The notes under the pieces were generated by a model. It had not been told where the DNA came from. It did no database searches and saw only the letters and a program-made list of their open reading frames with translations. A DNA stretch of 64,000 nucleotides from Macrostomum lignano (taxonomy: Eukaryota), in contig NIVC01000581.1 in NCBI GenBank assembly GCA_002269645.1, positions 124,001 through 188,000 of the forward strand. The letters are read 5' to 3'. Shown piece after piece: positions 41,973 to 63,682 of this stretch. Both the position numbers and the translations under genes were made by a program. Position 1 is the stretch's first letter, and each line of letters opens with the position of its first letter.

Positions 41973-42805
41973 CCATGAACTCGGCTAGCAAGAGGCGCAG
42001 AATGGAAAAGCTTTATTGGACAAGACAGAACTCTGCAATTCGCTTGTTGCTGGTCTCCCAAATCCATGTTTCATATTGAAGTTAGAGGTACACAAAAAAC
42101 CTATATTTGGCGTTGGAAATTTCAGTATTAATGTCTGGGATTTGGAGTGCTGCGAGACTGATTGATGCAGAAGTCACTAACAGACTTAGATTCTTTCTTC
42201 AAATCCGCTTTGTACTCACACTCAGACTGTACTCAGACTGAGTGTTAGAGCTATAATAAAACATAAATAAATGAAGCTCAAGCACAGCGAATGAAACAGG
42301 CGCAGTCTTGCCGTAAAAAAGGCATTTATTGATTGCTCACTAGCAAGCACACAATGGGATACAAAGCTTTCTCCAGGTTTATCTTAATAAAAATGCGCGA
42401 ACAAATGACTCGCCAAAACTTAGCAATCTGGAATGGAAACCCGCTGGCCCCAGCTCAAGCTGCTTTACGTAATGACTGACGTCGGATCTTCAACAGTAAA
42501 ACTGCTTGCGGAACTTACTTAGCCGGGCATGGAAATTGCGATGGGGCCAGCTTGTTCCTCCCCATACTTCCAAGTACCAGATAGAAGTCCTTGACCAGCA
42601 GCAGACTAACCAGCAATTTTCGCCCGAATGCGAGCTCCAAGCCTTCAAGGCCGTCCAGACAGTGTAGGATTCCTTTTTTAAGATGCAAATTAAAAACCAT
42701 GCTTCATCAAGAAGCAGAAACAACTGTCGGAGAATCCCCTACTTGTCAGTTCTACTGCTAAAGGAACAGAAAAAACGCAGTCACGTGACCGGCTCAAGCA
42801 GGAAT

Positions 42806-44228
42806 TCAGCCGGAAGCCACGGCGGCGCTGCTGCTGGCGGCGCTGGCAGCCAGGCTCTGGTCGTACCTCAGCTTGCTCCAGCGCTGGTTCACCGGCAGGA
42901 ACGGGTCGGACAGGACCCAGTTGTGCACTTCGTTGCCGCGCACTGTGAAGTACTTCTTGCCGATGCTGTCCCCCAGCATTGCCCGCAGCAGGGTGTTCCG
43001 GCGCACCTGCTTCTGGTAGAAGCTGGCGCCACCCCGCGGATAGGCGGCGGCTGCGCGCTTGTCTACGCGGGCGTCCAGCGATTTGCGGTACGCGGAGTGC
43101 CACTGGTAGGCCATGACGGCCCACAGGCTGGTGGAGGCCGCCACCAGAGCGGACAGCAGCAAATTCCTCCCTAGGCGGGGCGAGCAAACAGGGGGCTCGT
43201 GTTAGAGAATTCAGTGTGGCGTCTGTGCGACAGGCGTCACGGCCCTGTGGAAGCTTGCGTGCCTGCGTACGTAGCTGTGTGCCTATGCGTGCTCAGGTGT
43301 GCATGTCTACGATGACCTCTTCCTGCACCCAGCCAGAGCATGACTACAAAGCAATTGAAAACTCAGCAAATCGCTCACTGTTGGCCCGGCCTTTCAACAG
43401 GTTATCAACAAACTGACGACCGCTGCCCCTGGTGAACCAGAAGGTGGTGCCGATCACCCCGCTGGCTGCCAGGGTGCCGACAGCGGGCGGCACGTGGACA
43501 GCGTAGGAGTTCAGGTAGGCAAGCTCCCGGGCGAGCGCGAAGCCCAGCTCGTCCTCATTGAGCAGCAGGCAGTCGCGGTACAGCTCCCGGCCGCGCTTCG
43601 TGTTCAGCGATAGCGGCCTGTCGTCAAAGAAGAAGACGTGCCGCTGCTCCTTGTCACTGGCCGAGTAGCCGAAGTGCTGCGGCAGGCCGAGGAAGGCCTG
43701 TGAAAAAGCAGCAATGCGAGCCTCAGCTTTACGCATCAAAGTGTCGGACTGTTTGAGTAAAACAAAAAAACTGAGCTTTCAAAGTGATTGAGAAACGAAT
43801 GAGAAGTGATTCAATTGCTTTTCAGGCACCCACAGAGCCGGTAAAGCCACGTGCGTCACGGCTTGGATCGGGAAGAAAAGGCAGCAGGACAACTAGGAAC
43901 AATCAGGGATTCTTACCTGAAAGCCCTGGCTGGCGGACAGCCGGCCGAAGCGCACCGGGTCGACGCCGCGGCCGACGAACAGGCTGAGCTGGTCAATGCA
44001 GGCCGGCTGAATGCCCAGCCTGTCCGCTGCGGCTCTCAGAGCGGAGCGGAGCTCCTGGGACACGGCGAGCATCTCGGAGCTGCCCTGCTGGGTGCAGGCG
44101 CAGCGGTAGGCCCGGTAGGACTGCGTCAGGTTGTGCAGCCCGTAGTAGGCGGCATCTGCGGCCAGCGTGCCGGCCAGCATGGCTGACAGCAGCTTGTGGG
44201 AGCGGATCAGCGACAGCAGGTGGGACAT
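42806..44228 (-). CDS. TMEM177: TMEM177-like mitochondrial membrane protein; 3 exons, about 331 aa
   Basis: Exons 44228-43917, 43697-43379 and 43170-42806. Motifs FLGLPQHF, LNEDELGFALARELAYL and AYPRGGASFYQKQVRRN.LLR.MLG..G.KYFTVRGN resemble TMEM177 as recalled. Confidence 0.8.
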
Positions 44229-44239
44229 GCGGCTGCGAA

Positions 44240-44850
44240 TGGGGAGGAGGGTGCAGATGAGGATTGGAGAGGGTGCGGATGAGGACTGGAGAGGTGCAGA
44301 TGAGGATTGGAGAGGGTGCAGATGAGGACTGGAGAGGTGCAGATGAGGATTGGAGAGGGTGCAGATGAGGCTTGGAGAGGGTGCAGATGAGGATGGGGAG
44401 GGTGCGGATGAGGATTGGAGGGTGCGGATGAGGATTGGAGAGGGTGCAGATGAGGCTTGGAGAGGGTGCAGATGAGGCTTGGAGAGGGTGCAGATGAGGA
44501 TGGGGAGGGTGCGGATGAGGATTGGAGAGGGTGCAGATGAGGCTTGGAGAGGGTGCAGATGAGGATGGGGAGGGTGCGGATGAGGATTGGAGGGTGCGGA
44601 TGAGGATTGGAGAGGGTGCAGATGAGGCTTGGAGAGGGTGCAGATGAGGATGGGGAGGGTGCAGATGAGGCTTGGAGAGGGTGCAGATGAGGATGGGGAG
44701 GGTGCGGATGAGGATTGGAGAGGGTGCAGATGAGGCTTGGAGAGGGTGCAGATGAGGATTGGAGAGGGTGCAGATAAGGCTTGGAGAGGGTGCAGATGAG
44801 GCTTGGAGAGGGTGCAGATGAGGATGGGGAGGGTGCAGATGAGGATTGGT
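44240..44850. repeat. 21/22-bp array (GGAGAGGGTGCAGATGAGGATT/CTT) directly 5' of TMEM177
   Basis: About 28 units. Confidence 0.95.
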
Positions 44851-44967
44851 GAGTGAATTGCAGCAGTTAGGTAAATTGTACACAGACTTTACTACTAGCA
44901 GTAAGCCAAAAGCAAGACAAAGAAGCGGTGCTTTTCTGCTGCAAGGCTAATTCACCTGAGCAGCAGT

Positions 44968-44973
44968 TTTATT
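44968..44973 (-). terminator. Candidate AATAAA of PTPA
   Basis: TTTATT on the plus strand. Confidence 0.55.
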
Positions 44974-45451
44974 ATCAAAGCGTATAAATTATCAATCATC
45001 AGGGCGGGTGGGCAAAGAGACTCAGTCGGATTGACAATCAGCGAGAAATCAACACTTGATATTCTACTGAAATATAAAGTACTCGTATGTACAAGGGTTG
45101 CAAGGACTCAATGAGTGGACATGAAACTCATATGATGATACTTGAACCCAAAGGGACTGTCATATGAGCAGGCAGACAGAACAGCTCTCAAACAGAACAA
45201 TTAATTCTCTTTCGACAGGATATTACACAGACGGATCTTATTAAATAGCTCATTCTGGTGACACTGGGCCATGGAGAATTAAATAGAATAAACCAGCATT
45301 CCCTGCAGAAAATGCAGAATCCGGTATTCAGCACGCAGTGCCAACACCAGCTGACAGAAGTTGGGACCCAGCAGCTCCACATTGATTGGGGACTAAACGA
45401 TGTTGCAATTAAAAAGCATTGAATGGCCCAGCGCAGGCAGGGACGCAGCAA

Positions 45452-47647
45452 TCAGACAGGCCGCTGGAACTCGCTGGCCGGCTTCAGTGGCAGCAGTTCG
45501 CCAAAGTAGAAGTGCTGGATGATGGGGAACTTTGCCAGAATCTCCGCCTTGTACATCTTCACCAGGCCGGAGTTCACCTTGTCCCAGGAGTACACCCCGC
45601 TGATGCCGTGCAGCGTGCTGGAGTGCTCCTCGAAGGGACCGGACTTCACCTGCGGTTGGAGAGGAGCAGTGAGTTAGAGGCGACTCACTGTGTGCTGCGG
45701 TGGGGATTCCCAGTGTTCTGCAGTGGGGATTCCCAGTGTGCTGCGGTGGGGATTCCCAGTGTGCTGCGGTGGGGATTCCCAGTGTGCTGCGGTGGGGATT
45801 CCCAGTGTGCTGCGGTGGGGATTCCCAGTGTGCTGCGGTGGGGATTCCCAGTGTGCTGCGGTGGGGATTCCCAGTGTGCTGCGGTGGGGATTCCCAGTGT
45901 GCTGCGGTGGGGATTCCCAGTGTTCTGCAGTGGGGATTCCCAGTGTGCTGCGGTGGGGATTCCCAGTGTTCTGCAGTGGGGATTCCCAGTGTGCTGCAGT
46001 GGGGATCCCCAGTGTGCTGCGGTGGGGATTCCCAGTGTGCTGCAGTGGGGATTCCCAGTGTGCTGCAGTGGGGATTCCCAGCCCAGTCTTCCGCAGTGGG
46101 GATTCTCAGTGTGCTGCGGTGGGGATTCCCAGTGTGCTGCGGTGTGGATTCCCAGTGTGCTGCGGTGGAGATTCCCAGTGTTCTGCAGTGGGGATCCCCA
46201 GTGTGCTGCGGTGGGGATCCCCAGTGTTCTGCAGTGGGGATTCCCAGTGTGCTGCGGTGGGGATCCCCAGTGTTCTGCAGTGGGGATTCCCAGTGTGCTA
46301 CGGTGGGGATCCCCAGTGTTCTGCAGTGGGGATTCTCAGTGCGCTGCAGTGGGGATCCCAAGTGCGCTGCAGTGTGTCACCTTGAATATGTAGTCGAGGC
46401 AGCCGAAGAAGAGGTTCTCCTTGGCCAGCTGCTCCGCCTTGCTCCTGTTGGGAATGTCGGCCGGCTGCACCTTTGGATTGCCGATCAGCTGCGCGCTGCC
46501 CCAGATGAAGGGCACGAACTGGAAGTCGTCCAAGCACCAGACTCCGTGGCTGCCAGCCGGCTCCATGCGGTAGGTCACCTGGCATGAGCGGGAATGCAAA
46601 CCATCCGGCATGTAGAAGGTAGAAAATCCTTGCATACTAATCTAAGCCTACGATTAAACCTTAAGTCCGAACGGGCCCTCAGAAGCAACTGAAGTCAGCA
46701 CCAATCAGCCAGATTCCCAGATCCCAGCTTCTGCATCCAGTCACAGATCCCAGCTTCTGCATCCGCAACACCGCAGATCCCAGCTTCTGCATCCGCAACA
46801 CCGCAGATCCCAGCTTCTGCATCCACAGTCACAGATCCCAGCTTCTGCATCCGCAACACCGCAGATCCCAGCTTCTGCTTCCAGTCACAGATCCCAGCTT
46901 CTGCATCCACAGTCACAGATCCCAGCTTCTGCATCCGCAACGCCGCAGATCCCAGCTTCTGCATCCAGTCACAGATCCCAGCTTCTGCATCCGCAACGCC
47001 GCAGATCCCAGCTTCTGCATCCACAGCCGCAGATCCCAGCTTCTGCATCCACAGCCGCAGATCCCAGCCTCTGCTCCAGCATCCGCACTCATAGCTCCCA
47101 AAACGCTCACCTGCAAACGCCGCACCAGGTCCAGGTAGCGGGCAAACACGGAGAGCGCAACAGCGGCGCAGTCGGCGGTGACGAGGAAGCCCGACTTGAA
47201 CAGGCAGCAGATGAAGGCCACAAAGGCCAGCTCATGGCCGGTGCCGTAGTCGATGCGGGTGCCGTTGCCAAACGATTCGACAAAGTAGCGGACGAGCTCG
47301 GCGCGCCGCTGCTCCGACAGATCCTGGCTGAGGCCGTCGGCCAGGCAGTCGGCCAGCAGGCCGGGCGCCTCGGACTCGAGCCGCTGCAGCCAGGTCTTGA
47401 AGGCGCGGTTGCCGAACCTGGCCGGCTGCTCTACCGGCGGAATCTCGTCAATCCAGGAGTCCAGCTTGGCCAGCAGGGAGTTGAGGCGGCCGCAGCGCTC
47501 GGACACAGAGTAGCTGTCCGGGCCGGCCTGCAGCGGCTTGCCCCGCACCGAGCTACTCACTGCCGCGATGAAGCCCAGAATCTCCTGGTAGGCCAGCGAC
47601 CGCTCCCAGTCGCGCATGTTGGCTGGTGACCGCACGAGCTTCTCCAT
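45452..47647 (-). CDS. PTPA: PP2A phosphatase activator (PTPA/PPP2R4); 3 exons, about 310 aa
   Basis: Exons 47647-47111, 46578-46381 and 45649-45452 (phase 0, 0). Motifs [60 protein letters not shown]. Confidence 0.95.
45685..46375. repeat. 23-bp array (GGGGATTCCCAGTGTGCTGCGGT), PTPA intron 2
   Basis: About 30 units. Confidence 0.95.
46705..47080. repeat. 28/30-bp array with core CAGATCCCAGCTTCTGCATCC, PTPA intron 1
   Basis: About 13 units. Confidence 0.9.
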
Positions 47648-47849
47648 GGCAGATCGGGGCGGCTGCTGCGGGCAGGGAAGTTCAGTGCCGCAATAATCAA
47701 AGGCGGGCTTGAGAGGCTGCCAGCAGAAAGCGAAATTTAAATTCGAAATTTAATTAGGCCATAATTTTATTGTTTACGTAGCGAAAAATTCTGTCACTTT
47801 CACTTTCCAAAAATTTACCTGATCAAAATTGCGAGCTTGTAACGTTTTG

Positions 47850-48120
47850 GGTTAGTGAAGATAAAGACCTCTATGCATTAAAGGTTAGTGAAGATAAAGA
47901 CCTCCATGCATTAAAGGTTAGTGAAGATAAAGACCTCCATGCATTAAAGGTTAGTGAAGATAAAGACCTCCATGCATTAAAGGTTAGTGAAGATAAAGAC
48001 CTCCATGCATTAAAGGTTAGTGAAGATAAAGACCTCCATGCATTAAAGGTTAGTGAAGATAAAGACCTCCATGCATTAAAGGTTAGTGAAAATAAAGACC
48101 TTAATGCATTAAAGGTTAGT
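47850..48120. repeat. 33-bp array (GGTTAGTGAAGATAAAGACCTCCATGCATTAAA)
   Basis: About 8 units. Confidence 0.95.
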
Positions 48121-48216
48121 AAAATTTTGGTAAATCATCAGAGAATATTTCCTAGCTTGTCACCTACAGCTGTTTGAATAAAAAACGCAAGAATCATATG
48201 AAAAAGCATTATTATA

Positions 48217-48994
48217 CGAGGGGTGTCCCAAAAGCAGTGTCACTTCTCACTACATCTCTCGTGCTGCTGATCCAAATAACATCATTTTGCACAGATTTAT
48301 AGCGGCAACTCTCTTCTTCATATTAATTTTAACATCATTAAAAACAGACAATGGAAACAAAAGTTATGAACCAAAATGTAGCAGGAACTCGACCATAGAC
48401 TTACAGCAAGTAAGCAAGTTAACAAAAATTCGAAGTGGTAGCTCACAAACAGGTAACAGGCTGCAGTGAATGCTGCAAAATGACTGCGGTGAATGACTGC
48501 GATAGACCTATGAGCCGATGAAAGTTGAGCATGAATCTCGGCTCGACTGTGCCCCGTCCCCAAAAGGGTGTATAACACACTCCTCTGAGCAACACTTGAA
48601 TGCACATCCCTGACTTTTAGCGCAGCAGAAGGAGGGAACAAAAAGCAATAAAGCTGAAGCCCAGTTTGAAATATTCTGTTGCTTTAAAAGCTATATGCTT
48701 CTCCAAGTTTTTCCATAGACATCTCTTTGTCACAGCAGCCTAACAAAGAAGTCTGAGTGCATTCAATCAAAACTTTCGCTACTTTCCGCTATCTTGTCGA
48801 ATTACTGTAAGTCTATGGTCGAGTTCCTGCTACATTTTAGTTCATAACTTTTGGTTCCATTGTCTGTTTTTAATGATATTAAAGTTAATATAAAGAAGAG
48901 AGTTGCCGCTACAAATCTGTGCAAAATGATGTTATTTGGATCAGCAGAACGAGAGATACAGTGAAAAGCAACACCACTTTTGGGGCACCCCTCG
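48217..48994. mobile_element. 778-bp Tc1/mariner-type non-autonomous element (MITE) with 190-bp inverted arms
   Basis: Arms 48217-48406 and 48805-48994, 15 mismatches in 190; termini CGAGGGGTG; TA duplication at 48215-48216 and 48995-48996; no transposase ORF. Confidence 0.9.
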
Positions 48995-49012
48995 TAGCAA
49001 CAATATTATATA

Positions 49013-49018
49013 TTTATT
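49013..49018 (-). terminator. Candidate AATAAA of PPIL2
   Basis: About 140 nt after the stop and 17 nt from the MITE target site. Confidence 0.6.
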
Positions 49019-49159
49019 GCGTGCTTGCTCAGTTTAAGCTTGAGGCAAAAATTTCGCACAGCACAAATACAGCTGGAGCAGAGGAGTGAGTTGGTCAGGG
49101 CCACGCAGCATCAAGAGCAAGCAAATCAGAGTTTCTTAGAAACGCAGAACTGGTGGCCA

Positions 49160-52100
49160 TCACCAGCCGCTGAAGTCGCTCAGCTGGCTCGTGTCCTTCA
49201 CAGAGCGGGGCTTCTTGGGCGGCCCCGAATCCGGCTGAGCCTGCGGGACTTGCCGCTTGCCCTGCTGCTGCTTCTGCAGCTGGCGCAGGTTGAGGAACTG
49301 CCCGACGCCGGTGCCGAAGGCCTTCTTCGGCTGCGAGGTCACCGCGGGAGTCGCCGAGGTGGTGGCGGCGGACTGCGAGGAAGCGGGAGCGGCTGCAGAG
49401 GCGATAGCGGCCCGCTCAGAGGCCAGAGCTGCGTCCACCTGCTCGAAGGGGTCCACGAACACCTGCGAATATCGGCGTGGTGCGGGGGGCGGGGTGAGGA
49501 GACTCCAGCCACAACCGCCTTTACTTACTGATTTCACAGTTTGCGCCCTCAGAACAGATTCAGCAAAAATATCACAAGTAACCAAAATAAAGCTGGCATT
49601 TCACTGAGCTCTGCAGCCAAGAATACAAGTACATCCGCACTCAGTGACCTGAGCTCTGCAGCCAAGAATACAAGTACATCCGCACTCAGTGACCCGAGCT
49701 CTGCAGCCAAGAATACAAGTACATCCGCACTCAGTGACCTGAGCTCTGCAGCCAAGAATACAAGTACATCCGCACTCAGTGACCCGAGCTCTGCAGCCAA
49801 GAATACAAGTACATCCGCACTCACTGACCCGAGCTCTGCAGCCAAGAATACAAGTACATCCGCACTCAGTGACCTGAGCTCTGCAGCCAAGAATACAAGT
49901 ACATCCGCACTCAGTGACCTGAGCTCTGCAGCCAAGAATACAAGTACATCCGCACTCAGTGACCCGAGCTCTGCAGCCAAGAATACAAGTACATCCGCAC
50001 TCACTGACCCGAGCTCTGCAGCCAAGAATACAAGTACATCCGCACTCAGTGACCTGAGCTCTGCAGCCAAGAATACAAGTACATCCGCACTCAGTGACCT
50101 GAGCTCTGCAGCCAAGAATACAAGTACATCCGCACTCAGTGACCCGAGCTCTGCAGCCAAGAATACAAGTACATCCGCACTCACTGACCCGAGCTCTGCA
50201 GCCAAGAATACAAGTACATCCGCACTCAGTGACCTGAGCTCTGCAGCCAAGAATATAAGTACATCCGCACTCAGTGACCTGAGCTCTGCAGCCAAGAATA
50301 CAAGTACATCCGCACTCAGTGACCTGAGCTCTGCAGCCAAGAATACAAGTACATCCGCACTCAGTGACCTGAGCTCTGCAGCCAAGAATACAAGTACATC
50401 CGCACTCAGTGACCTGATTTCTGCAGCCAAGAATACAAGTACATCCGCACTCAGTGACCTGAGCTCTGCAGCCAAGAATACAAGTACATCCGCACTCAGT
50501 GACCTTTGCTCTGCAGCAAAGAATAAAAGTACATCCGCAATGTAATTAATTAACAATTTCATTCTGACGTGTTGGGGGGTTGTCGCTGACTATTGACTGG
50601 CTAGATATTAAACTGACTCACTTTGTGCCCTACTTACCCTGCATAGCGTCCACCCCACTCATGCGTACATCAATGCGCACATAGCGTACTTTCAAATCTA
50701 ACTTTTATCAATAACTCAAATATCGTTTTATACCACTACGTATTTAAATAACTGAATCTAGCTTTTCTTTGTTGTAATATTTACTCAGCAAATATATCAG
50801 TTCGCTGCATTATTGTTCAAATTAAACAAGCCTTGTCTGCGTCGCGTCACATCCTGCAGCCAAATCACTGAACTCTGCAGCCAAGAATAAAAGTACATCC
50901 GCACTCAGTGACTCGAACTCTGCATCCAGGAATAAAAGTACATCCGCACTCAGTGACTGAGCTCTTCAGCCAAGAATAAAAGCTTACCTGGGCACTGAGA
51001 ATTCGCACGTCCTCAATCGGCCGGTCATTCTTGTCAACCTCAACGGTCTCGATTCGGTCCAGCGTGTCCGAGCCGCCGACCAGTCGGCCGAACACGGTGT
51101 GCCGCCTGTCCAGATGCCGACAGGACCTGTAGGTGATGAAGAACTGGCTGCGGTTCGAGTTCGGGCCCGAGTTCGCCATGCTCAGCACGCCGCGGCTGTC
51201 GTGATTGAGAAACGGGCGCAGCTCGTCGCGGATGGAGCCGCCCCAGGCGCTCTCACCGCCCGAGCCCGTGCCGGTGGGGTCGCCGCCCTGCAGCACGAAA
51301 TGGCGCACGGATCTGGGAGTGACAGTCCGGGAGTGACGGAGTGGCATGAATTTCAAGTCGTGACGCTTTTAGAATTAATCTGATCGAATCTTCACCAGAT
51401 AAGTTTTTATCCGGGTGTCCAAGACTGAGATTTGAGCTCGCGATAGGCCAGAGCCGCTGAGCCAGGACCTCAGCCACGGACACACGGATTCAAAGTTCTA
51501 TCAAATGATCAGTACGCCGCACTTTTGCGCGCACACTCGAGATCTGCTTCAAATTCATTTTTTTCAACTCGTTAGTAGGCCGGGCTATTTTTAATATGCG
51601 ACTGACACAATAATTCATCTTATTAAAGTCTTCACAATAAATGAAGCCCGCAAGTCTCACCTATGAAACACGGTGCCATTGTAGTAACCCTTGCGGCACA
51701 GAAGGATGAAATTCTCGCAAGTCTTCGGACAGTGCTCGCAGTCCAGCTCCAGGTTCAGCTGGCCGAAGTTGGTCTCCAGGCGGACGTAGCCTTTTGTTTT
51801 GACCCGGGGGTACCTCACCTGGTCGTCATCGAGCCTGGCCGCTTCCAGGTGGGTCACTCGGTCCATTGTGGTGGAGGTGAAGCTAGCCGCCGCTGCGCCA
51901 GTTGAGTAATGAGCTGCATTGATGGTGTCATCTGCCTGCGGGAGGTCGGATTGAACTCACTGCTCAGCATGTCGCACTCAGCCCCTTGAACTCTGTATCC
52001 CATCTAAATCCCATCTGCTTGACCTCACATCCCCGTCCCACCGTCGCCTCACCTTCCTCCGCAGGCCGGCGCCCTCGGCAACATCGGGGCCGCGGAGCGC

Positions 52101-53495: not shown

Positions 53496-53524
53496 TGCTG
53501 CTGCGGGGTGGCAAGGCTGGCTGT

Positions 53525-53735
53525 AAGCTGGCCAATCAGAGCGGGCTGTGACTGACTGGCCAATCAGAGTGGGGTGTGACTGGCTGGCCGAGCAGAGTGG
53601 GGTCTGACTGGCTGGCCAATCAGAGTGGAATGGGACTGGCTGACCAATCAAAGTGGAGTGGGACTGGCTGGCGGGGTGTGACTGGCTGGCCAATCAGAGT
53701 GGGGTCTGACTGGCTGGCCAATTAGAGCGGGGTCG
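53525..53735. repeat. 28-bp array carrying GGCCAATCAGAG (NF-Y-type CCAAT box) directly 5' of PPIL2
   Basis: About 7 units. Confidence 0.85.
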
Positions 53736-53852
53736 GACTGACCCCACCACAATCGGAGTGAGGGCAGGTCAATAAAAGTTGGCGGTCTAAATGTTCCACC
53801 AGATTTTTTAAAATAAAAACAAGCCCCGACGTGCTGTGGTACAAGGAAAAAA

Positions 53853-53858
53853 TTTATT
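53853..53858 (-). terminator. Candidate AATAAA of PDCD6
   Basis: TTTATT on the plus strand. Confidence 0.55.
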
Positions 53859-54411
53859 GACAAATATTAAATATGTATATTGCTCAAGCGGACACAGACC
53901 CGTACAAAGCGAGTTGCCATTGAAAAAAACTTTAAAGCCGCATAAAACACGATGCCTTAAACGGAAAACTACGGTATATATGAATCAGTTGGCAAAAAGC
54001 AGGTATAGCGATCAGATTACTGAATTAATATTTGTAATTGCTGAGTACAGCTGGCTTATTGCAACAGAAAAAACACAACTGCGCGTCAGTAACTGAAGCA
54101 TTGGAAATATACAGTACTAATTACTGGCTTAACCCAGACTTCAGTAAGCAGTCATGATTTATGGGAGTTCAATAAACATAAAATTCAAAACCAATCACAA
54201 AGATCTCTATGGGGCATCGAAAACCTCATCTGCATTTGGTGCGGATGCACAATTCGATTCGCCAAGATCCCCTACTTGTTCACAGCGGTGTTGAGCACAC
54301 TGCTCAGGAAGGTCTCACAGCTGATGCAGATCCCCGAACCCAGATCCCCTACTTGTTCACAGCGGTGTTGAGCACACTGCTCAGGAAGGTCTCACAGCTG
54401 ATGCAGATCCC

Positions 54412-56250
<1,839 letters not shown>

Positions 56251-56269
56251 GAATCCGACTCTTCCCCGG

Positions 56270-56850
56270 CACCCACCTGCAATTAGACTCACTGAAACTG
56301 GCACCCACCTGCAATTAGACTCACTGAAACTGGCACCCACCTGCAATTAGACTCACTGAAACCGGCACCCACCTGCAATTAGACTCACTGAAACTGGCAC
56401 CCACCTGCAATTAGACTCACTGAAACTGGCACCCACCTGCAATTAGACTCACTGAAACTGGCACCCACCTGCAATTAGACTCACTGAAACTGGCACCCAC
56501 CTGCAATTAGACTCACTGAAACTGGCACCCACCTGCAATTAGACTCACTGAAACTGGCACCCACCTGCAATTAGACTCACTGAAACTGGCACCCACCTGC
56601 AATTAGACTCACTGAAACTGGCACCCACCTGCAATTAGACTCACTGAAACTGGCACCCACCTGCAATTAGACTCACTGAAACTGGCATCCACCTGCAATT
56701 AGACTCACTGAAACTGGCACCCACCTGCAATTAGACTCACTGAAACTGGCACCCACCTGCAATTAGACTCACTGAAACTGGCACCCACCTGCAATTAGAC
56801 TCACTGAAACTGGCACCCACCTGCAATTAGACTCACTGAAACTGGCATCC
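56270..56850. repeat. 32-bp array (CACCCACCTGCAATTAGACTCACTGAAACTGG)
   Basis: About 18 near-identical units. Confidence 0.95.
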
Positions 56851-56932
56851 ACCTACAACAACACAAACAATGGCCCGAAAGCAGGCAACCAAGAGGCGAA
56901 GCTGAGATGCTGGAGACAGCAAAATCGCGCCA

Positions 56933-56938
56933 TTTATT
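56933..56938 (-). terminator. Candidate distal AATAAA of the zinc-finger gene
   Basis: TTTATT on the plus strand; another at 57044-57049. Confidence 0.45.
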
Positions 56939-57764
56939 GCATTATTGACAACAATTAGATAAAGAGAGCCAGAGGCTACACAGTGCTTTCAGAGTTATTC
57001 TTATTGCTAGGAGAAATTACAGCCACCAAAATTAATTATCCTATTTATTAATGACTAACAATAATCATAATTATCAACTATCAAGAACTGAGGAAAGACA
57101 AAACAGACAAGATATGCAACGCTGCTACAAAATTAGAACAGAAGTGTCACTAGTCGATGGAAACAGGGCTACGGACCAACACAGTAGAATATAAGTAACT
57201 GGCTGGCGGATACAAGCATGCCCGGCACTGAACGGGTGCTCATACTCATAATGCCAAATAAAATTTCACTAAAATTCACTAAAATTAAGAACTATAAGTT
57301 AAAAACAATGGGAAAAATTCATGCTACACCTGATAATTTTTATGTTAACATTAAAAAACCACAATGAAGACCTGATTAACAGAGTAATTTAAAACAACAG
57401 ACAGTAACTAAATAATCAAAAGTACATCAGCCAAGCCTCATCATCAAGAATCTGTGACGCCACAACAGTTATAATAAGAACAAAGCAAACGGGCAGTGCG
57501 AAAAGAAAAAAGCTGTGACAGCAAAGCATAAAGCAGAGCAAGCTTTGATTAGCAAAACAAGCTGCAATTTAAAAACAGCTGACTACTAACGGTCTTAATA
57601 GGCTAGTAGTACAGCAGGGCACGCCAGTCTACACTGTATTAATAAACAGAATAAACAGAGGCAAATAGTAACACCAGAAGTCAGTGATGCCAGCAGCATG
57701 ATCAAGACTGGTGGGAATAAACATCTGATGCACACAGGTAATAAATACTAAATAGCGCTAACAA

Positions 57765-58560
57765 GATGGCCAGGGTGAGCCACTCCCCTATTCAGTAAAC
57801 ACTAAATAGCACTAACTATGATAGATGGCCAGGGTGAGCCACTCCCCTATTCAGTAAACACTAAATAGCACTAACTATGATAGATGGCCAGGGTGAGCCA
57901 CTCCCCTATTCAGTAAACACTAAATAGCACTAACTATGATAGATGGCCAGGGTGAGCCCACTCCCCTATTCAGTAAACACTAAATAGCACTAACTATGAT
58001 AGATGGCCAGGGTGAGCCACTCCCCCATTCAGTAAACTAAATAGCACTAACTATGATAGATGGCCAGGGTGAGCCCACTCCCCTATTCAGTAAACACTAA
58101 ATAGCACTAACTATGATAGATGGCCAGGGTGAGCCACTCCCCTATTCAGTAAACACTAAATAGCACTAACTATGATATATGGCCAGGGTGAGCCCACTCC
58201 CCTATTCAGTAAATACTAAATAGCACTAACTATGATAGATGGCCAGGGTGAGCCACTCCCCTATTCAGTAAACTAAATAGCACTAACTATGATAGATGGC
58301 CAGGGTGAGCCACTCCCCTATTCAGTAAACTAAATAGCACTAACTATGATAGATGGCCAGGGTGAGCCCACTCCCCTATTCAGTAAACTAAATAGCACTA
58401 ACTATGATAGATGGCCAGGGTGAGCCACTCCCCTATTCAGTAAACTAAATAGCACTAACTATGATAGATGGCCAGGGTGAGCCCACTCCCCTATTCAGTA
58501 AACTAAATAGCACTAACTATGATAGATGGCCAGGGTGAGCCCACTCCCCTATTCAGTAAA
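57765..58560. repeat. 58-60-bp array (GATAGATGGCCAGGGTGAGCC...CTAAATAGCACTAACTAT)
   Basis: About 13 units with small indel variants. Confidence 0.95.
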
Positions 58561-58807
58561 AATATGAAAATTGCTACTCGGAGGAAAAAATCATTAATTT
58601 AACTATCAAAAATTGAATATTGAATATAATGAATGAAAACTCAGACATAAGGTTCCATGAATTCTTTGGAACAAGCATTTTGCAGGACTAACAATTTAGA
58701 ATGGACTGGAAGCGACAGACGGCTTCCAATCCATAGGATTCAGGTGTCCATGGGAATAACTGCACAGGAACTCGAACACGAAACCATCCCGGGGCCAACA
58801 CAGGCCC

Positions 58808-60688
58808 TCAGCCCCACACCATGAGGGCGGACTCGCCCGAGGCGGTGATCCGCCGGGCCATCAGGCGGCAGGCGTGGATGGAGAAGTCCGGATCGCCCAG
58901 TCGGCGGGCCAGGGCCGGGCAGCAGGGAGCCGCATCTGGCGGCAGCAGCTTCCGCTCCCATGGCAGCTCGAAGGGGTTCCGGCTGAGATCGGTGGCCGGA
59001 AGAAATGAGAGAGCGGCAGAAGCTGGCACCGGAGGCCCAGCGCTAAGGGGAGCAGCCAAGTGGTCGGCAGAGCTGAGCTCAGCAAAGCAGGAGTTCACCC
59101 GCCTGATGGAAGTCGCTGGAGGGCCGCAGGCGGCAGCAGAAGCAGCAGCAGGCAGCAGAACTTTGCGTTTCTTGCCGCCATGCTTGCCGCGATACACAAT
59201 TCTGGCGGTCTTGAACACGGGCCTGGGGGTCCAGCACAGGTAAACTGGCGGTCTGGGCGCCACAGCCTCAACGGGAGTAGCGGAGCCGCAATCGGTAGGC
59301 GAGTCTACCATTGACTGGGGGCTGCTGCTGCTGCTACTGGTGCCCGAGTGGCTATCGTTGCCATTGGTAACGCAGGCCGCCATGGGGCTGGGCGTTGTGG
59401 CTCGTGAGATTCCATTGCTTGCCCGTTCAACCTTGGCTGCGTGAAATCGCTGCACGTGACGCTTCGGCGATGAGGTGCCGGAGAAAGCTTCGTCGCAATT
59501 ATCGCATTCCATTCGCTTTCTTTTTGCAGTATTTTCTGACTCAGGCTTGCGAGACTTCAAACAAGGCAACTGAGGATTGGCATTTTTCTTACAAGCAGCT
59601 ATGGGGACAGGAGCAGACTGCTTTTTCCCGGCCTTGCCTGAGCCTGCGTTTGACTTTCTTCTAATAAACTCGTCAAATTCGATTTCCACTTTACTAGCGG
59701 ACTGGCTGGTTGCATCTCCGCTAAACTGCTCTGCCTCCGCTGTGTTTGATCGCTGGCGCCTGTCGGACTGGAATTTCTTTGAAACGTGGGCGCGCAATTT
59801 TTTTGCTTGACTACCAGCGCCGGCTTTCGCCTTCTTGCCAATAAAGAGTTTAACTTTCTCTCCGATCTCGGGCTTGTCTTTATGATGTCTGCGGTTGTGG
59901 CGATACAGTGACGACTTGGTAGCGAAGGAGCGCCTGCACAATACGCAGCTCGCCGAGCCGGGCACATTAACCTCGCCGTTGGATTTCTCAGAGGCAGATT
60001 TGACAGCCGATTGTGTCTCTGACGGAGCAGAGGCCGGAACACTGCTTGTCTCGGAGCACACTGGAACTGTGGCGGATGCAGTTCTCTGAAAACTTTTGCT
60101 ACCTTCAGTCTTGCTCTGGCTGGCAGCGCCAACGCAGCCTCGCTGAAGGTGCCGAAGCAGAACAACTTGGTGGCGAAACGACTTCGAGCAATGGCGGCAA
60201 GATGAAGGCTCCGGCTTGCCATTTCTGTTAGCGCAGCTCACCTTACTGTCTTTCACCTCTCTTACTGAAGGTAAGCCATTCAGTTGCCTCCTGCTTGGCA
60301 GTTTTGCAGACAGCACTTTGGCTGCTCCGTTTGCTGCAGAATTCTTTTTCTCACCATGAGTATTTTTACGCGGCTTCGGGCCCCGCTTCTTCGCTGGACT
60401 TGACTGGAAGACAGCCTGCCTCCCAGCATCTCCCTCATCTTTGCCGCTACTGTTGGAAATACTTCCAGCAGGGACCTGCACACCGTTTACGAGCCCAGCA
60501 GATGGAGCTTTCAGCTTCTTGGTTCTCGCCGCAACCTTTTGCTGCCTGCAGTGACAGACCATGTGAGTGCTGAGGCGCTGGCTGCTGAGAAACACCTTGC
60601 GGCACAGGCGGCAACTGGGACTGCGGTTTGCCGTTTTCGTCTCAGGTCGCCCACCAGCACCCGCTCTTAGCTGCCTTCGATCTTTCAT
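58808..60688 (-). CDS. C2H2/C2HC zinc-finger protein with four widely spaced fingers, about 626 aa (3' end may splice onward)
   Basis: Long non-repetitive ORF with CRLCRKVF..HMVCH, CRHCSKSF..HLQRGC, CVLCRRSF..HNRRH and CDNCDEAF..HVQRFH. First ATG 52 nt after the acceptor at 60741-60742. A possible extra exon follows ATG|GTGTGG near 58822. Confidence 0.75.
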   Translation of the reverse strand: MKDRRQLRAGAGGRPETKTANRSPSCRLCRKVFLSSQRLSTHMVCHCRQQKVAARTKKLKAPSAGLVNGVQVPAGSISNSSGKDEGDAGRQAVFQSSPAKKRGPKPRKNTHGEKKNSAANGAAKVLSAKLPSRRQLNGLPSVREVKDSKVSCANRNGKPEPSSCRHCSKSFRHQVVLLRHLQRGCVGAASQSKTEGSKSFQRTASATVPVCSETSSVPASAPSETQSAVKSASEKSNGEVNVPGSASCVLCRRSFATKSSLYRHNRRHHKDKPEIGEKVKLFIGKKAKAGAGSQAKKLRAHVSKKFQSDRRQRSNTAEAEQFSGDATSQSASKVEIEFDEFIRRKSNAGSGKAGKKQSAPVPIAACKKNANPQLPCLKSRKPESENTAKRKRMECDNCDEAFSGTSSPKRHVQRFHAAKVERASNGISRATTPSPMAACVTNGNDSHSGTSSSSSSPQSMVDSPTDCGSATPVEAVAPRPPVYLCWTPRPVFKTARIVYRGKHGGKKRKVLLPAAASAAACGPPATSIRRVNSCFAELSSADHLAAPLSAGPPVPASAALSFLPATDLSRNPFELPWERKLLPPDAAPCCPALARRLGDPDFSIHACRLMARRITASGESALMVWG

Positions 60689-61170
60689 ATCTAGATTAAG
60701 AAGACTCAAATCGGAATCAGCATACCACAGTGCTGTGCACCTGAAATACACATTAGTCATTATGAGCTTACTTGGGCAATTTCCAAATGTATTTAAAATT
60801 TCAAAATCTATTTTAAGCTTTATAAATATAAAAAAACGGTTACTTCTAGACTAAGGAGGCCTTGGTACATAAGCTAAACAAACATGGGAAGCTAAACAAG
60901 ACAAGACTAGGCAAATAGGCACGGCACCTAAGTTTGACAAATAAAGAGACAATTTGCGGCTTTCAATTGTGAACAAACAAATGCAACTTTGATGCTACTG
61001 TGTATTTCCATATAACCAGAGTTGAACTCGCACACAAAAGAGCCGATCTAACGGAACCAGTGATGAACAAGGAAAGCAATAGAAGAATAGAATTAGCAAA
61101 ACCAAAACTGAAACCAAGCTGACCATGGAAACTCAATCCACGCACAGGTCAGATTGGCAGAATCGGCAGC

Positions 61171-62784
61171 TCAGGTGTATAAGTAGGCGGAGGAGCCGTT
61201 GGCGCCTGGCTGGCGGCACAACAGCCGCATGACGCGGTCTGAGTTGGGCGGCCAGGCGGGCCGGCAGTAGCGCAGCGGCTGGCAGGCGAGCGCAGGCCGG
61301 AAGGCGGCCATGGCGGCCGGGTCAGGCGGCAGCAGCCGGTGCGGCTCGCCGTCACAGTCGGCCTCGGCCACGAAGGCAACAAAGGCGGCGGCCGGCACGC
61401 GGCGCATCTGGCAGACGCTGAGCAGCTGGGCGGGCAGGCCGGTCAGCAGGTTCGGTGGCTCCAGTTGCTGCACGGCGTCACCTGCCGCCCTGTGGGACAA
61501 TTTTGTATTGAGGCCTATTGCCTGAGTTTGTATTGAGTAACAAAGACCTGTCAATCACTCACTTGCCCTGTCCGAGCATGGCGCTGGACCGCAGGCAGCG
61601 CAGCAGGGGCCAACCAGAGAGGAGGCCGGCTCAGCCGACTGGAAGCTCGTCAGCGGCTGCGTGCCCAGCACCGCCAGATCCAGCGATTCGACGTCCAGCA
61701 CAGACAGCAGCAGCTCCACGAACTCGTGACAGTCGGCAGGAGGAACTGGGGCGGCGGCGTGGCAGACCAGCACCTGCGTGCGATGGGGAAACTGCGTCAC
61801 AGGCTGCACTGATCAGCTTCATCATCCACACCAATCAGCTCCATCACCCACACCAATCAGCTCCATCACCCACACCAATCAGCTCCATCACCCACACCAA
61901 TCAGCTCCATCACCCACACCAATCAGCTCCATCACCCACACCAATCAGCTCCATCACCCACACCAATCAGCTCCATCACCCACACCAATCAACTCCATCA
62001 CCCACACCAATCAGCTCCATCACCCACACCAATCAGCTCCATCACCCACACCAATCAGCTCCATCACCCACACCAATCAGCTTCATCACCCACACCAATC
62101 AGCTTCATCACCCACACCAATCAGCTTCATCACCCACACCAATCAGCTTCATCACCCACACCAATCAGCTTCATCACCCACACCAATCAGCTTCATCACC
62201 CACACCAATCAGCTCCATCACCCACACCAATCAGCTTCATCACCCACACCAATCAGCTTCATCACCCACACCAATCAGCATGAGTACGAGTGGTCGTTTG
62301 CGTACAGTATTGGCGCACTTTTATGTGTGTCTCAGCGCTGGTTGTGTGACATAGTGTGTCGCCAAAGGCGTTGCACCCTCCCACCAACCTGCGGGTTGCA
62401 CTTCAGCCGATACAAGAAGCAGCCAAAGTCCCCCAGCGCAGTCTGCCCCAGGCTGTTGGCCAGCCCAGCCTCCGGGAAGCCACAGCTGATGAGGCCCAGA
62501 ATCTCAGCGTCATCGCCCAGAACGCAGGCGGTTAGGAAGCCGCAGGCGGCGGGCCCGACGCCAACCAGCAGGGTGCTGCAGTCGAGGACCCGCCGGTCCC
62601 CAGCCGCCAGCTGCTGCCGAGCAGCGGGGCTGAGGCGCATCGCGCAGCTCCGGACATCGGAGGCCTTCAAACGGCCACTGTCGCCTCCTTGATCCTCGCC
62701 GCCGTCCCAGTCGGAGTCCTCGGAGTCGTCAACGGCGCGGGAGAACTCAGGCAGCCGCTTGGGAAACGGGCCGTCGGCGGCCAT
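61171..62784 (-). CDS. PSMG1: Proteasome assembly chaperone 1 (PAC1); 3 exons, one 1-nt frameshift
   Basis: Exons 62784-62389, 61773-61563 and 61489-61171. Motifs CSTLLVGVG..A.GFL, FLYRLKCNPQV.VC, PLLRCL (after adding a C at 61606-61609), LEPPNLLTGLPAQLLSVCQ, AFRP.L and C-terminal YLYT match PSMG1 as recalled. Confidence 0.85.
61810..62280. repeat. 22-bp array (CCAATCAGCTYCATCACCCACA), PSMG1 intron 1
   Basis: About 21 units. Confidence 0.95.
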
Positions 62785-63682
62785 GGAGAAGCAAGAATTT
62801 GTGGCAACTGCGGCTTGGCGAGCAAAACTGAAGCGGTTTGTTCAGTGCAACTGCCATCAGCTCTGGTGTGAGATAAAGTCAAACGAATATTAATTGTACA
62901 GCAGTCTGTAAATTAACTTTGACAGCAGTCTGTAAGCTAATTTTGACAGCAGTTTGTAAACTAATCTTTATAGCACTCAGTAATAATTTTTACTAAAATA
63001 AATATAGGTTATAATTTTTAGCATATACAAATGGAAGGATTAAACTTTTTTTAAAATAAAAACCTCCTTACATAGTTACATTGTCATTGCTTCTTTTATG
63101 ATTCATAGATGACCCATCCCCCCCCCTAGTCCATTATGCTAAGCATGTAGCAGCCTAATTAGCATTAACTTAGTATGCTAGTGTGCCAAGTATGCCAGAC
63201 AAAATGCACTAGTGCACCAGGTGTGCCAGCAGTGAGTCTAAAATCTCTTAGCTGCTGACTCCAGTATTGATATAAACATTTATATAAATTTAATCCATCC
63301 CAGTCATTTTGTCCTCTGTCCAGTGCGTGCTCCCAATGCTTGAACGATTTCTTTATGCTATTTAAACTACCGTTTTGGGCTCTATCATTTTCATGCTCTT
63401 CCATCTCCTCTGTTTTCTTCTCCTTTTATGTTAAATTTGCATTGTTTTCGATTGACTACCAAGCCTATTTAGCCCAACCGCAAAGTTTATTAATTTTAGT
63501 TTAATTTCTTTATTGTAATTTAGCACCCCGGTATAGCTGCGAACCAATCTCTGTTGACAAATTAATTACCTTAACCCACCTGCTACTCATCATCAGACAC
63601 CTAGCCTTTTTTTGCTTGAATAATAATATTAATTACCATAATAAGTATGCCAATTAATTTTTTGTTGATCATTAAGCCATAG

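What the first reader, a model, noticed from the sequence alone, without database searches (positions are those of the whole stretch)
42806..62810. Candidate six-gene operon resolved by SL trans-splicing: PSMG1 > ZnF > PDCD6 > PPIL2 > PTPA > TMEM177
Seen: six consecutive minus-strand genes. Each ATG has a YAG 3' splice site just upstream: PSMG1 23 nt (weak tract), ZnF 52 nt, PDCD6 2 nt (CCCCTTTTCTCCAG|CCATG), PPIL2 5 nt, PTPA 18 nt, TMEM177 4 nt. Raw distances from the upstream gene's AATAAA to the next acceptor are about 1380, 350, 1345 and 735 bp, but most of that is array or MITE. Collapsed, they are roughly 125-300 bp. PSMG1 stop to ZnF acceptor is 430 bp and U-rich on the transcribed strand. 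Known: flatworms and nematodes use SL trans-splicing to cut polycistronic pre-mRNAs, typically of housekeeping genes. Inference: this is an operon whose spacers were later inflated by tandem amplification.
Basis: partly seen in the sequence, partly recalled or inferred. Interest (0 to 1): 0.82.

Follow-up and report, generated by a model that had tools for sequence, protein, structure and literature searches.

The report
Known-type flatworm operon cluster, repeat-bloated
This is a run of six same-strand housekeeping genes in the flatworm Macrostomum lignano that the public RNA-seq annotation already treats as two three-gene polycistronic units, a published and common arrangement in this species.

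Summary
The window is Macrostomum lignano assembly Mlig_3_7, contig NIVC01000581.1. Six minus-strand genes, a YAG just upstream of each ATG, and AATAAA-to-acceptor gaps of 1387, 358, 1353 and 741 bp were all re-measured. The gaps collapse to 162, 138, 297 and 128 bp once arrays and a MITE are removed.

SL trans-splicing, operons of up to nine genes, and repeat-inflated operon spacers with a repeat-adjusted peak near 100 bp were published for this species in 2021.

GenBank locus tags encode RNA-seq-assembled transcriptional units. PSMG1, ZnF and PDCD6 share Mlig030201. PPIL2, PTPA and the sixth gene are Mlig013084 g1, g2 and g3. The annotated 5' ends of PPIL2 (53486) and PTPA (47662) sit directly after an AG, in frame with the AUG that ends the SL.

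The PDCD6-to-PPIL2 junction is bridged in none of three genomic copies. It carries a minisatellite of perfect CCAAT boxes. Two units, or a hybrid operon, is therefore at least as likely as one six-gene operon.

No SL-read data could be reached, so trans-splicing is inferred, not shown. The 'TMEM177' label could not be verified.

The parts
63755..64000 (+). Upstream boundary: gag-like retrotransposon fragment on the opposite strand, running off the window.
   Evidence: Translation. Weak Retrotrans_gag hit, E=2.4e-4, below the Pfam cut-off. No called gene in the 7.9 kb upstream of PSMG1.
61171..62819 (-). PSMG1 (proteasome assembly chaperone 1, Pfam PAC1). ATG at 62784. Exons about 62784-62385, 61775-61563 and 61489-61171. 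Annotated 5' end at 62817-62819, not after an AG. A 22-mer array (61812-62279) lies in intron 1. A C4 run at 61609-61606 (C5 in L002 and L003) shifts the frame.
   Evidence: Locus tag BOX15_Mlig030201g7.
60741..61170 (-). PSMG1-ZnF spacer: 430 bp, 40% T, no array, no AATAAA or ATTAAA. A GTAAG at 60771 lies 31 nt upstream of the acceptor.
56933..60740 (-). C2H2 zinc-finger gene, single exon. Acceptor tttcag|G gives an exon start at 60740. First in-frame ATG after it is at 60688; stop at 58808. The 3' UTR holds a 59-mer array (57764-58561). AATAAA at 56938-56933.
   Evidence: In the L002 copy the annotated CDS starts one base after the AG.
55552..56932 (-). ZnF-PDCD6 spacer: 1381 bp, of which 1219 bp is two minisatellites (32-mer at 56268-56858, 24-mer at 55628-56255). 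162 bp is unique.
   Evidence: Copy numbers are 18.5 and 26.2 here against 41.5 and 9.2 in L002.
53853..55551 (-). PDCD6-like EF-hand gene. Acceptor ccccttttctccag|CC gives an exon start at 55551. Exons 55549-55342 and 54764-54412. A 29-mer array lies in the intron. A 77-mer duplication spans the stop codon. AATAAA at 53858-53853.
   Evidence: (exact match to PAA80442.1).
53527..53740 (+). 28-mer minisatellite in the PDCD6-PPIL2 spacer. Each good unit carries GGCCAATCAG, the NF-Y CCAAT-box consensus (recalled, not tested). Candidate internal promoter. This is the only junction not bridged by an annotated transcriptional unit.
   Evidence: Four perfect boxes here, 18 in L002.
49013..53520 (-). 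PPIL2. Candidate acceptors give exon starts at 53520, 53500, 53497 and 53486. ATG at 53495. Exons 53495-53112, 52376-52053, 51935-51661, 51312-50988 and 49462-49160. AATAAA at 49018; further signals at 47771 and 47754.
   Evidence: (the 533-aa form starting at 53486 is exactly PAA80441.1, Mlig013084g1).
48215..48996 (.). MITE-like insertion (214-nt inverted termini, 89% complementary) in the PPIL2-PTPA spacer. Absent at an empty site in paralogue L005.
47850..48120 (.). 33-mer minisatellite in the PPIL2-PTPA spacer: 8.2 copies here, 11.2 in L005.
44968..47662 (-). PTPA. Acceptor gcagcag|CCG gives an exon start at 47662. ATG at 47647. Exons 47647-47111, 46578-46381 and 45649-45452. Both introns hold arrays. 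AATAAA at 44973-44968.
   Evidence: (the 315-aa form starting at 47662 is exactly PAA80440.1, Mlig013084g2).
44247..44853 (.). 22-mer minisatellite filling 607 of the 735 bp of the PTPA-to-sixth-gene spacer.
42012..44232 (-). Sixth gene ('TMEM177', label unverified). Acceptor cattcgcag|CCGC gives an exon start at 44232. ATG at 44228. Exons 44228-43917, 43697-43379 and 43170-42806. AATAAA at 42330 and 42017.
   Evidence: (the 325-aa form starting at 44210 is exactly PAA80439.1, Mlig013084g3).
40796..41969 (+). Downstream boundary: GNAT acetyltransferase gene on the opposite strand, convergent with the sixth gene.

Best explanation
The segment is an ordinary M. lignano operon cluster. It is transcribed on the minus strand as polycistronic precursors, which are cut into single-gene mRNAs by 3' cleavage and polyadenylation of the upstream gene. 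The 35-nt spliced leader (SL) is then trans-spliced onto an AG acceptor just upstream of, or just inside, the next coding region.

The best-supported architecture is two three-gene units: PSMG1>ZnF>PDCD6 and PPIL2>PTPA>sixth gene. PSMG1 is probably a first gene that is not trans-spliced. PPIL2 is probably driven, at least partly, by its own promoter in the CCAAT-box minisatellite. That would make the whole cluster either two operons or a hybrid operon.

For PPIL2 (acceptor at 53486) and PTPA (acceptor at 47662), the AUG at the 3' end of the SL is in frame and can supply the start codon.

The long raw spacers exist because every non-coding interval of this locus, introns included, carries its own fast-evolving minisatellite, plus one recent MITE.

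Shown: gene order, gene models, distances, repeat content, transcriptional-unit membership in the public annotation, and conservation in paralogues. Inferred: actual SL addition at each site, promoter positions, and continuity across the PDCD6-PPIL2 gap.
For: Organism and contig identified.

Published biology: a single SL ending in ATG, 30% of genes trans-spliced and 15% in operons. Operon spacers are inflated by repeats, with a repeat-adjusted mode near 100 bp and a 1-kb threshold. Operons reach up to nine genes.

The locus-tag prefix denotes an RNA-seq-assembled transcriptional unit, cut at SL and poly(A) peaks.

Tags in the window contig: PSMG1 is Mlig030201g7 and PDCD6 is Mlig030201g5/6. 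PPIL2, PTPA and the sixth gene are Mlig013084g1, g2 and g3. The window's own ZnF tag was hidden, but the 99%-identical L003 copy has ZnF as Mlig030201g4.

Copy L003 repeats both trios: Mlig030201 g2, g4, g6 and Mlig030335 g2, g3, g4. Copy L002 joins PSMG1+ZnF as Mlig024131 g2, g3.

The annotated 5'-partial CDS starts of PPIL2 and PTPA abut an AG exactly and are in phase with the SL AUG. The ZnF start in L002 is one base after the AG.

Repeat-adjusted spacers are 128-297 bp.

Paralogue L002 has TTGCATG, the SL 3' end, in place of the PDCD6 acceptor, fused to the same exon start.

The PDCD6-PPIL2 junction is unbridged in 0 of 3 copies, although the longer ZnF-PDCD6 arrays are bridged. It carries 4 (window) or 18 (L002) perfect RRCCAATSRG boxes.

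The run is bounded by opposite-strand features on both sides.
Against: No SL-containing read, poly(A) read or TSS data could be examined. All RNA evidence is second-hand, read from locus tags and CDS start coordinates.

Transcriptional units can over-merge. In L002, PTPA and the acid phosphatase share prefix Mlig015018 (g1, g4), although a GNAT gene on the opposite strand lies between them.

Units can also under-merge at repeats, as the authors themselves note.

The annotated 5' ends of PSMG1, ZnF (window copy) and the sixth gene lie 8-10, 2-4 and 20-22 nt downstream of the nearest YAG, not at it.

Only ZnF and PDCD6 match the published YTNCAG acceptor motif.

CCAAT pentamers also occur in another array, the 22-mer. 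The window-wide count of the 10-mer consensus is not significant (6 observed against 3.4 expected).

The old UniRef model A0A1I8G6U6 fuses PDCD6 to PPIL2. If RNA-based, that would argue for continuity across the gap.
Confidence: 0.55

Rival explanations
1. One reading: one six-gene operon, with a single promoter upstream of PSMG1 and all five downstream genes resolved by SL trans-splicing. The annotation break between PDCD6 and PPIL2 would then be an assembly artefact.
For: Under the published operational criteria, all five junctions qualify if the downstream genes are flagged as trans-spliced. Those criteria are: same strand, adjacent, downstream gene trans-spliced, and repeat-adjusted distance under 1 kb. 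The PDCD6-PPIL2 spacer is only 138 bp after removing the array, like the others. The authors state that units tend to split in repeat-rich operon spacers. An older gene model fuses PDCD6 and PPIL2 through the acceptor ttacag|CC at 53520.
Against: The break recurs in all three genomic copies. Yet spacers with 1.2 kb of arrays are bridged in two of those copies. The unbridged spacer contains a CCAAT-box array. The fused model may be an ab initio artefact. The similar fusion in A0A1I8G6V6 runs through the antisense strand of a GNAT gene.
Confidence: 0.25
2. Six independently transcribed genes, each with its own promoter. The annotated multi-gene units come from read-through or overlapping UTRs of neighbouring same-strand genes. 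Any trans-splicing serves only to trim monocistronic outrons.
For: About 60% of trans-spliced M. lignano genes are not in operons. Raw spacers of 0.35-1.4 kb could hold promoters. The Mlig015018 case shows unit over-merging. The PSMG1-ZnF spacer has a TATAAA 84 nt upstream of the ZnF acceptor.
Against: The unique sequence left in three spacers is only 128-162 bp, and that includes the upstream gene's poly(A) region. The same trios are merged independently in two or three copies. The run of six is strictly co-oriented and bounded by opposite-strand features.
Confidence: 0.13
3. Some of the acceptors are ordinary cis-splice acceptors joined to upstream non-coding 5'-UTR exons, or to the upstream gene, rather than to the SL.
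For: Donor-like sites exist: CAG|GTGAAT at 44955, close downstream of the PTPA AATAAA (44973-44968), and GTAAG at 60771, 31 nt before the ZnF acceptor. The 32-mer array carries a GTGAG in each unit. Older gene models use 62827, 53520 and 44232 as cis acceptors. Acceptors shared between cis- and trans-splicing are common in flatworms (PMC12582326).
Against: The current annotation starts PPIL2 and PTPA transcripts exactly at the AG, with no upstream exon. No AG|GTRAG consensus donor occurs in any spacer. A 31-nt intron would be very short.
Confidence: 0.07

Closest known systems
Macrostomum lignano operons as defined by Ustyantsev & Berezikov 2021 (PMC8629364), built on the Wudarski 2017 / Grudniewska 2018 TU annotation
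   Same: Same species and same assembly. Co-oriented adjacent conserved housekeeping genes. AG acceptors close to the ATG. Spacers dominated by tandem repeats and a transposable element. Repeat-adjusted distances of 128-297 bp, against a published mode near 100 bp and a 1-kb threshold. Size within the published range of 2-9 genes.
   Different: Nothing in kind. This locus is not individually described in any paper searched. The public annotation splits it into two units.
Caenorhabditis elegans operons, including 'hybrid' operons with internal promoters (own knowledge; Blumenthal & Gleason 2003 is cited in PMC8629364)
   Same: Polycistronic precursor. 3'-end formation coupled to downstream trans-splicing. 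About 100-nt intercistronic distance once repeats are removed. A U-rich spacer (PSMG1-ZnF). A possible internal promoter before PPIL2.
   Different: M. lignano has one SL and no SL2-type leader specialised for downstream genes. Raw spacers are ten times longer because of minisatellites.
Operons of parasitic flatworms (PMC12582326; Schistosoma, cestodes)
   Same: Flatworm SL ending in AUG. Short intercistronic distances (median 99 bp in S. mansoni). Acceptor sites shared between cis- and trans-splicing. Chimeric gene models as footprints of polycistrons.
   Different: Those studies used a raw threshold of 300 bp or less. By that criterion none of these junctions would qualify.
Flatworm SL 3'-terminal AUG used as initiator methionine (own knowledge: Cheng et al. 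2006, J Biol Chem; not checked here)
   Same: At PPIL2 (53486) and PTPA (47662) the SL AUG is in frame with the ORF. At 53486 the genomic ATG is spliced away, so the SL AUG would be needed.
   Different: Not demonstrated here. The inference rests only on annotated transcript starts.
Relict SL sequences in dinoflagellate genes (PMC5585692, PMC6050394)
   Same: Paralogue L002 carries the SL 3' end (TTGCATG) in genomic DNA exactly where the SL would join PDCD6.
   Different: Only 7 nt match exactly (8 of 9, 10 of 11). The gene keeps its intron. A local template-switch mutation that created a CATG repeat could give the same result.

Membership tests
M. lignano SL-resolved operon (criteria of PMC8629364) | Immediately adjacent genes on the same strand, not interrupted by an opposite-strand gene | tested here: met
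   The GenBank gene calls list the six in order on one strand with nothing between them. The GNAT gene and the gag fragment on the other strand bound the run.
M. lignano SL-resolved operon (criteria of PMC8629364) | Repeat-adjusted intergenic distance below 1 kb | tested here: met
   162, 138, 297 and 128 bp from AATAAA to acceptor after removing TRF arrays and the MITE. The distance is 430 bp from stop to acceptor for PSMG1-ZnF.
M. lignano SL-resolved operon (criteria of PMC8629364) | Downstream gene carries the SL (SL-containing RNA-seq reads at its first exon) | not testable with these tools
   No read data or SL track was reachable. Indirect evidence: the annotated starts of PPIL2 and PTPA (all copies of PTPA) and of ZnF (L002 copy) abut an AG. 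PDCD6 has an SL-like relic in a paralogue. The sixth gene has no such support.
Operon in the strict sense (one promoter, one precursor) | A continuous precursor transcript covers all genes | tested here: inconclusive
   Annotated transcriptional units bridge four of five junctions: PSMG1-ZnF in 3/3 copies, ZnF-PDCD6 in 2/3, PPIL2-PTPA in 2/3, and PTPA-sixth gene in at least 2/3. PDCD6-PPIL2 is bridged in 0/3.
Operon in the strict sense (one promoter, one precursor) | No promoter or TSS in front of internal genes | tested here: inconclusive
   Sequence only. There is a tandem CCAAT-box array 36-222 nt upstream of the PPIL2 acceptor at 53500. No TSS data were available.
C. elegans-type SL2 operon | A specialised second spliced leader for downstream genes | tested here: not met
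   The literature reports a single 35-nt SL in M. lignano. This rests on the paper, not on new data.
TMEM177 family (sixth gene) | Significant sequence similarity to named TMEM177 proteins | tested here: inconclusive
   No Pfam family at E<=0.1. The word-indexed homology search returned only the M. lignano paralogue. The label may be right but was not verified.

The most novel reading that the evidence does not exclude
A minisatellite whose unit is a perfect NF-Y CCAAT box (4 boxes in this copy, 18 in the paralogue) has become a copy-number-variable internal promoter between PDCD6 and PPIL2. Tandem amplification would then have split, or hybridised, an ancestral six-gene operon. Separately, the TTGCATG that replaces the PDCD6 acceptor in the paralogue would be a relict spliced leader. 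That would be the first sign in a flatworm of cDNA-mediated conversion from trans-spliced mRNA.
Probability: 0.15. Interest if true: 0.5.

Novelty: already known. Interest (0 to 1): 0.17.

Why it matters
The finding adds little. It is one of thousands of operon-type clusters in a species where about 15% of genes are assigned to operons. The idea of a spacer inflated by repeats is already in print.

Its practical value is as a worked example. It shows that locus tags in GCA_002269645.1 encode precursor membership. It also shows that trans-splice sites can lie inside the annotated first codons, with the SL supplying the AUG.

The PDCD6-PPIL2 junction is a convenient place to test how M. lignano operons end and restart. 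Transgenesis exists in this species, so a CCAAT-array reporter is feasible.

Tried and rejected
Rfam and tRNA scans of the window found nothing. The SL sequence or its 3' 12-mer does not occur in the window, so no SL RNA gene is present.

Exact look-up of the 650-aa ZnF ORF failed because the deposited CDS is 5'-partial.

A concatenated five-protein query, meant to pull all M. lignano proteins in one search, returned only foreign PDCD6 and PPIL2 homologues. It wasted one search.

My first PPIL2, PTPA, sixth-gene and PSMG1 models were wrong in some junctions. They were corrected by ortholog-guided scoring and by annotated product lengths.

Supplementary tables of the two annotation papers, and a full-text search for the five TU identifiers, gave no locus-specific data.

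No RNA-derived contigs (Logan or ENA) carry these proteins, so no transcript 5' ends could be inspected.

The 33-mer array unit resembles the SL, with a best-alignment score of 10. That score is reached by 1.75% of shuffles. With about 45 arrays in the window, I rejected it as chance.

A perfect 9-mer of the SL 3' end inside an acid-phosphatase intron (37796) is also within chance expectation.

I considered that the co-oriented run extends to the acid phosphatase and USP genes. I rejected this because a GNAT gene on the other strand intervenes.

Full report
**What the window is.** The single-exon zinc-finger ORF retrieved its own deposited protein. An exact look-up placed that protein on NIVC01000581.1 of GCA_002269645.1, the Macrostomum lignano Mlig_3_7 assembly. 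The fetched locus is base-for-base identical to the window over 15,193 bp.

**Check of the observation.**
- Pfam confirms PAC1/PSMG1, C2H2 fingers, EF-hands (PDCD6-like), Rtf2/U-box plus cyclophilin (PPIL2) and PTPA.
- The sixth protein has no Pfam hit and no named homologue. 'TMEM177' therefore remains a label.
- I rebuilt the exon models. The PDCD6, PPIL2, PTPA and sixth-gene products match GenBank proteins residue for residue.
- The YAG-to-ATG distances (23, 52, 2, 5, 18, 4 nt) and the AATAAA-to-acceptor distances (1387, 358, 1353, 741 bp) are as stated.
- Arrays and a 782-bp MITE with 214-nt inverted termini account for most of the spacers. The unique remainders are 162, 138, 297 and 128 bp.
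- The PSMG1-ZnF spacer is 430 bp, 40% T, and has no canonical poly(A) signal.
- A YAG near an ATG is weak evidence on its own. The median distance for any ATG in this window is 20 nt. Only three of the six sites are individually unusual.

**What is already published.**
- Ustyantsev & Berezikov 2021 (PMC8629364) report one 35-nt SL ending in ATG.
- In their analysis 30% of genes are trans-spliced and 15% are in operons of two to nine genes. Their acceptor motif is YTNCAG.
- They also report that operon intergenic distances are inflated by repeats. [quoted passage not shown] They use 1 kb as the operon threshold.
- Wudarski et al. 2017 (PMC5730564) explain the gene names. [quoted passage not shown] They were cut into genes at SL-read and poly(A) peaks. 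The Mlig number is the unit and gN is the gene.

**What the annotation says about this locus.**
- In the window contig, PSMG1 is Mlig030201g7 and PDCD6 is Mlig030201g5/6. PPIL2, PTPA and the sixth gene are Mlig013084g1, g2 and g3.
- The window's own ZnF tag was hidden.
- The locus exists in two more copies.
- L003/L006 is about 99% identical. There PSMG1, ZnF and PDCD6 are Mlig030201 g2, g4 and g6. PPIL2, PTPA and the sixth gene are Mlig030335 g2, g3 and g4.
- L002/L005 is 92-96% identical. There PSMG1 and ZnF are Mlig024131 g2 and g3.
- Precursor-type assemblies therefore bridge four of the five junctions, each in two or three copies.
- The PDCD6-to-PPIL2 junction is bridged in none.

**Five-prime ends.**
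- The deposited CDSs of five of the six genes (all but PDCD6) are 5'-partial, so they start within three bases of the transcript start.
- PTPA starts at 47662, directly after gcagcag|.
- PPIL2 starts at 53486, directly after atgggcaag|. That is three codons inside the genomic ORF.
- In both cases the SL's terminal AUG falls in frame, giving [10 protein letters not shown]... and M-KQHSKD...
- This is what would be expected if these starts are SL sites.
- In L002 the ZnF CDS starts one base after tttcag|.
- The starts of PSMG1, ZnF (window copy) and the sixth gene lie 8-10, 2-4 and 20-22 nt downstream of the nearest YAG. I cannot explain these offsets.
- PDCD6 is annotated complete, so its transcript start is unknown. 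Its acceptor has the best polypyrimidine tract in the window and matches YTNCAG.

**A genomic fossil.** In the older paralogue the PDCD6 acceptor ctccag is replaced by tgcatg. That is four substitutions in six bases, in a region otherwise about 95% identical. By position this is unlikely to be chance, roughly 1e-3 by my estimate. It looks like a relict SL. A local template-switch mutation that created a CATG repeat is an alternative.

**The weak junction.**
- The 352 bp between the PDCD6 AATAAA and the 53500 acceptor contain a 28-mer array. Its units carry GGCCAATCAG. From memory, this is the NF-Y consensus RRCCAATSRG.
- There are four perfect boxes here and 18 in L002, at 28-bp spacing.
- The only other match on the transcribed side of a gene start in the window lies 172 nt upstream of the USP gene's start codon.
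- Taken with the 0-of-3 bridging, I think an internal promoter for PPIL2 is more likely than not.
- Three cautions apply. CCAAT pentamers also occur in the 22-mer array. Units are known to break at repeats. An old UniRef model fuses PDCD6 to PPIL2 through an acceptor at 53520.
- That fused model may be an ab initio artefact. Its sibling fuses PTPA, the sixth gene and the acid phosphatase across the antisense strand of a GNAT gene.

**Repeats.**
- Arrays cover 40% of the window and fill introns (56-84%) as much as spacers.
- Every array family in the operon region is shared with the older paralogue, but copy numbers differ widely. Examples are 18.5 against 41.5, 26 against 9, and 30 against 226.
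- The seeds therefore pre-date the duplication, and the copy numbers drift in both directions.
- Only the MITE is demonstrably a later insertion, because paralogue L005 has an empty site.
- 'Inflated spacers' is correct, but it is a property of all non-coding DNA here.

**Boundaries.** A gag-like fragment on the plus strand starts at 63755, and no gene is called for 7.9 kb upstream. Downstream, a GNAT acetyltransferase on the plus strand (40796-41969) is convergent with the sixth gene. It is divergent from an acid phosphatase gene. The run of six is therefore a delimited block.

**Verdict.**
- The mechanism proposed is the known one for this species and is probably right for most junctions.
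- The claim of a single six-gene operon is unproven, and I rate it less likely than two three-gene units or a hybrid operon.
- Nothing here is new in kind. The units are already encoded in the public annotation.
- The decisive data are the SL-read and T-fill tracks and reads spanning the spacers. They exist publicly but were out of reach of these tools.

Noticed in passing
L002:15320-15340 (paralogue of window 55551-55570): The PDCD6 trans-splice acceptor ctccag is replaced by tgcatg, giving ...tttttGCATG|CCATGG. That is the 3' end of the M. lignano SL fused to the same exon start. It could be a relict SL from cDNA-mediated conversion, or a template-switch mutation. L002 also has a 17-nt insertion that creates a new cctgcag| about 55 nt upstream of the ATG.
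   Followed up: partly
window 53527-53740 (L002:17692-18259): A 28-mer minisatellite whose unit contains GGCCAATCAG, a perfect NF-Y-type CCAAT box. It has 4 perfect boxes here and 18 in the paralogue. It sits 36-222 nt upstream of the PPIL2 acceptor at 53500.
   Followed up: partly
window 53486 and 47662: The annotated transcript starts of PPIL2 and PTPA put the SL's terminal AUG in frame. At 53486 the genomic ATG (53495) is spliced off, so the SL would have to donate the start codon.
   Followed up: partly
window 61606-61609: The window copy of PSMG1 has C4 where copies L002 and L003 have C5. The frameshift explains the truncated 228-aa deposited protein, against 319 aa in L002. It is either a homopolymer assembly error or a null allele.
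   Followed up: yes
window 54265-54473 (L002:16475-17162): A 77-bp tandem duplication contains the last codons of PDCD6, its stop codon and the start of the 3' UTR. There are 1.9 copies here and 8.9 in the paralogue.
   Followed up: no
window 48215-48996: A MITE-like element with 214-nt inverted termini. It is absent at a clean empty site in paralogue L005 (9341/9342), so it inserted after the duplication.
   Followed up: yes
whole window; for example 45690-46374 against L005:11532-16744: Minisatellites cover 40% of the window. Most introns and spacers in the 42.8-62.8 kb region hold their own unrelated array. The 23-mer array in PTPA intron 2 has 30 copies here and 226 (5.2 kb) in the paralogue.
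   Followed up: partly
window 40217-41969: A GNAT acetyltransferase (+ strand, 40796-41969) and the first exon of a His_Phos_2 acid phosphatase (- strand, 40217-40492) are divergent, about 300 bp apart. This may be a bidirectional promoter. In L002, PTPA and this phosphatase share a TU prefix (Mlig015018 g1, g4) despite the intervening opposite-strand gene, which shows that units can over-merge.
   Followed up: partly
window 62817, 60736, 44210: The annotated 5'-partial CDS starts of PSMG1, ZnF and the sixth gene lie 8-10, 2-4 and 20-22 nt downstream of the nearest YAG, rather than at it. This is unexplained.
   Followed up: no
window 60771: A GTAAG donor-like site lies 31 nt upstream of the ZnF acceptor, inside the PSMG1-ZnF spacer.
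   Followed up: no
window 47850-48120: The 33-mer array unit (minus strand GAGGTCTTTATCTTCACTAACCTTTAATGCATG) resembles the 35-nt SL. Its best-alignment score of 10 is reached by 1.75% of shuffles. This is not significant given about 45 arrays in the window.
   Followed up: yes
window 63755-64000 and beyond (L001:6083-6982): A degraded gag-like retrotransposon ORF on the plus strand, about 940 bp upstream of the annotated PSMG1 5' end.
   Followed up: partly
UniRef A0A1I8G6U6 and A0A1I8G6V6 (P0031, P0043): Older gene models fuse PDCD6+PPIL2 (766 aa) and PTPA+sixth gene+acid phosphatase (1175 aa). They use the acceptors at 53520 and 44232 as cis sites.
   Followed up: partly
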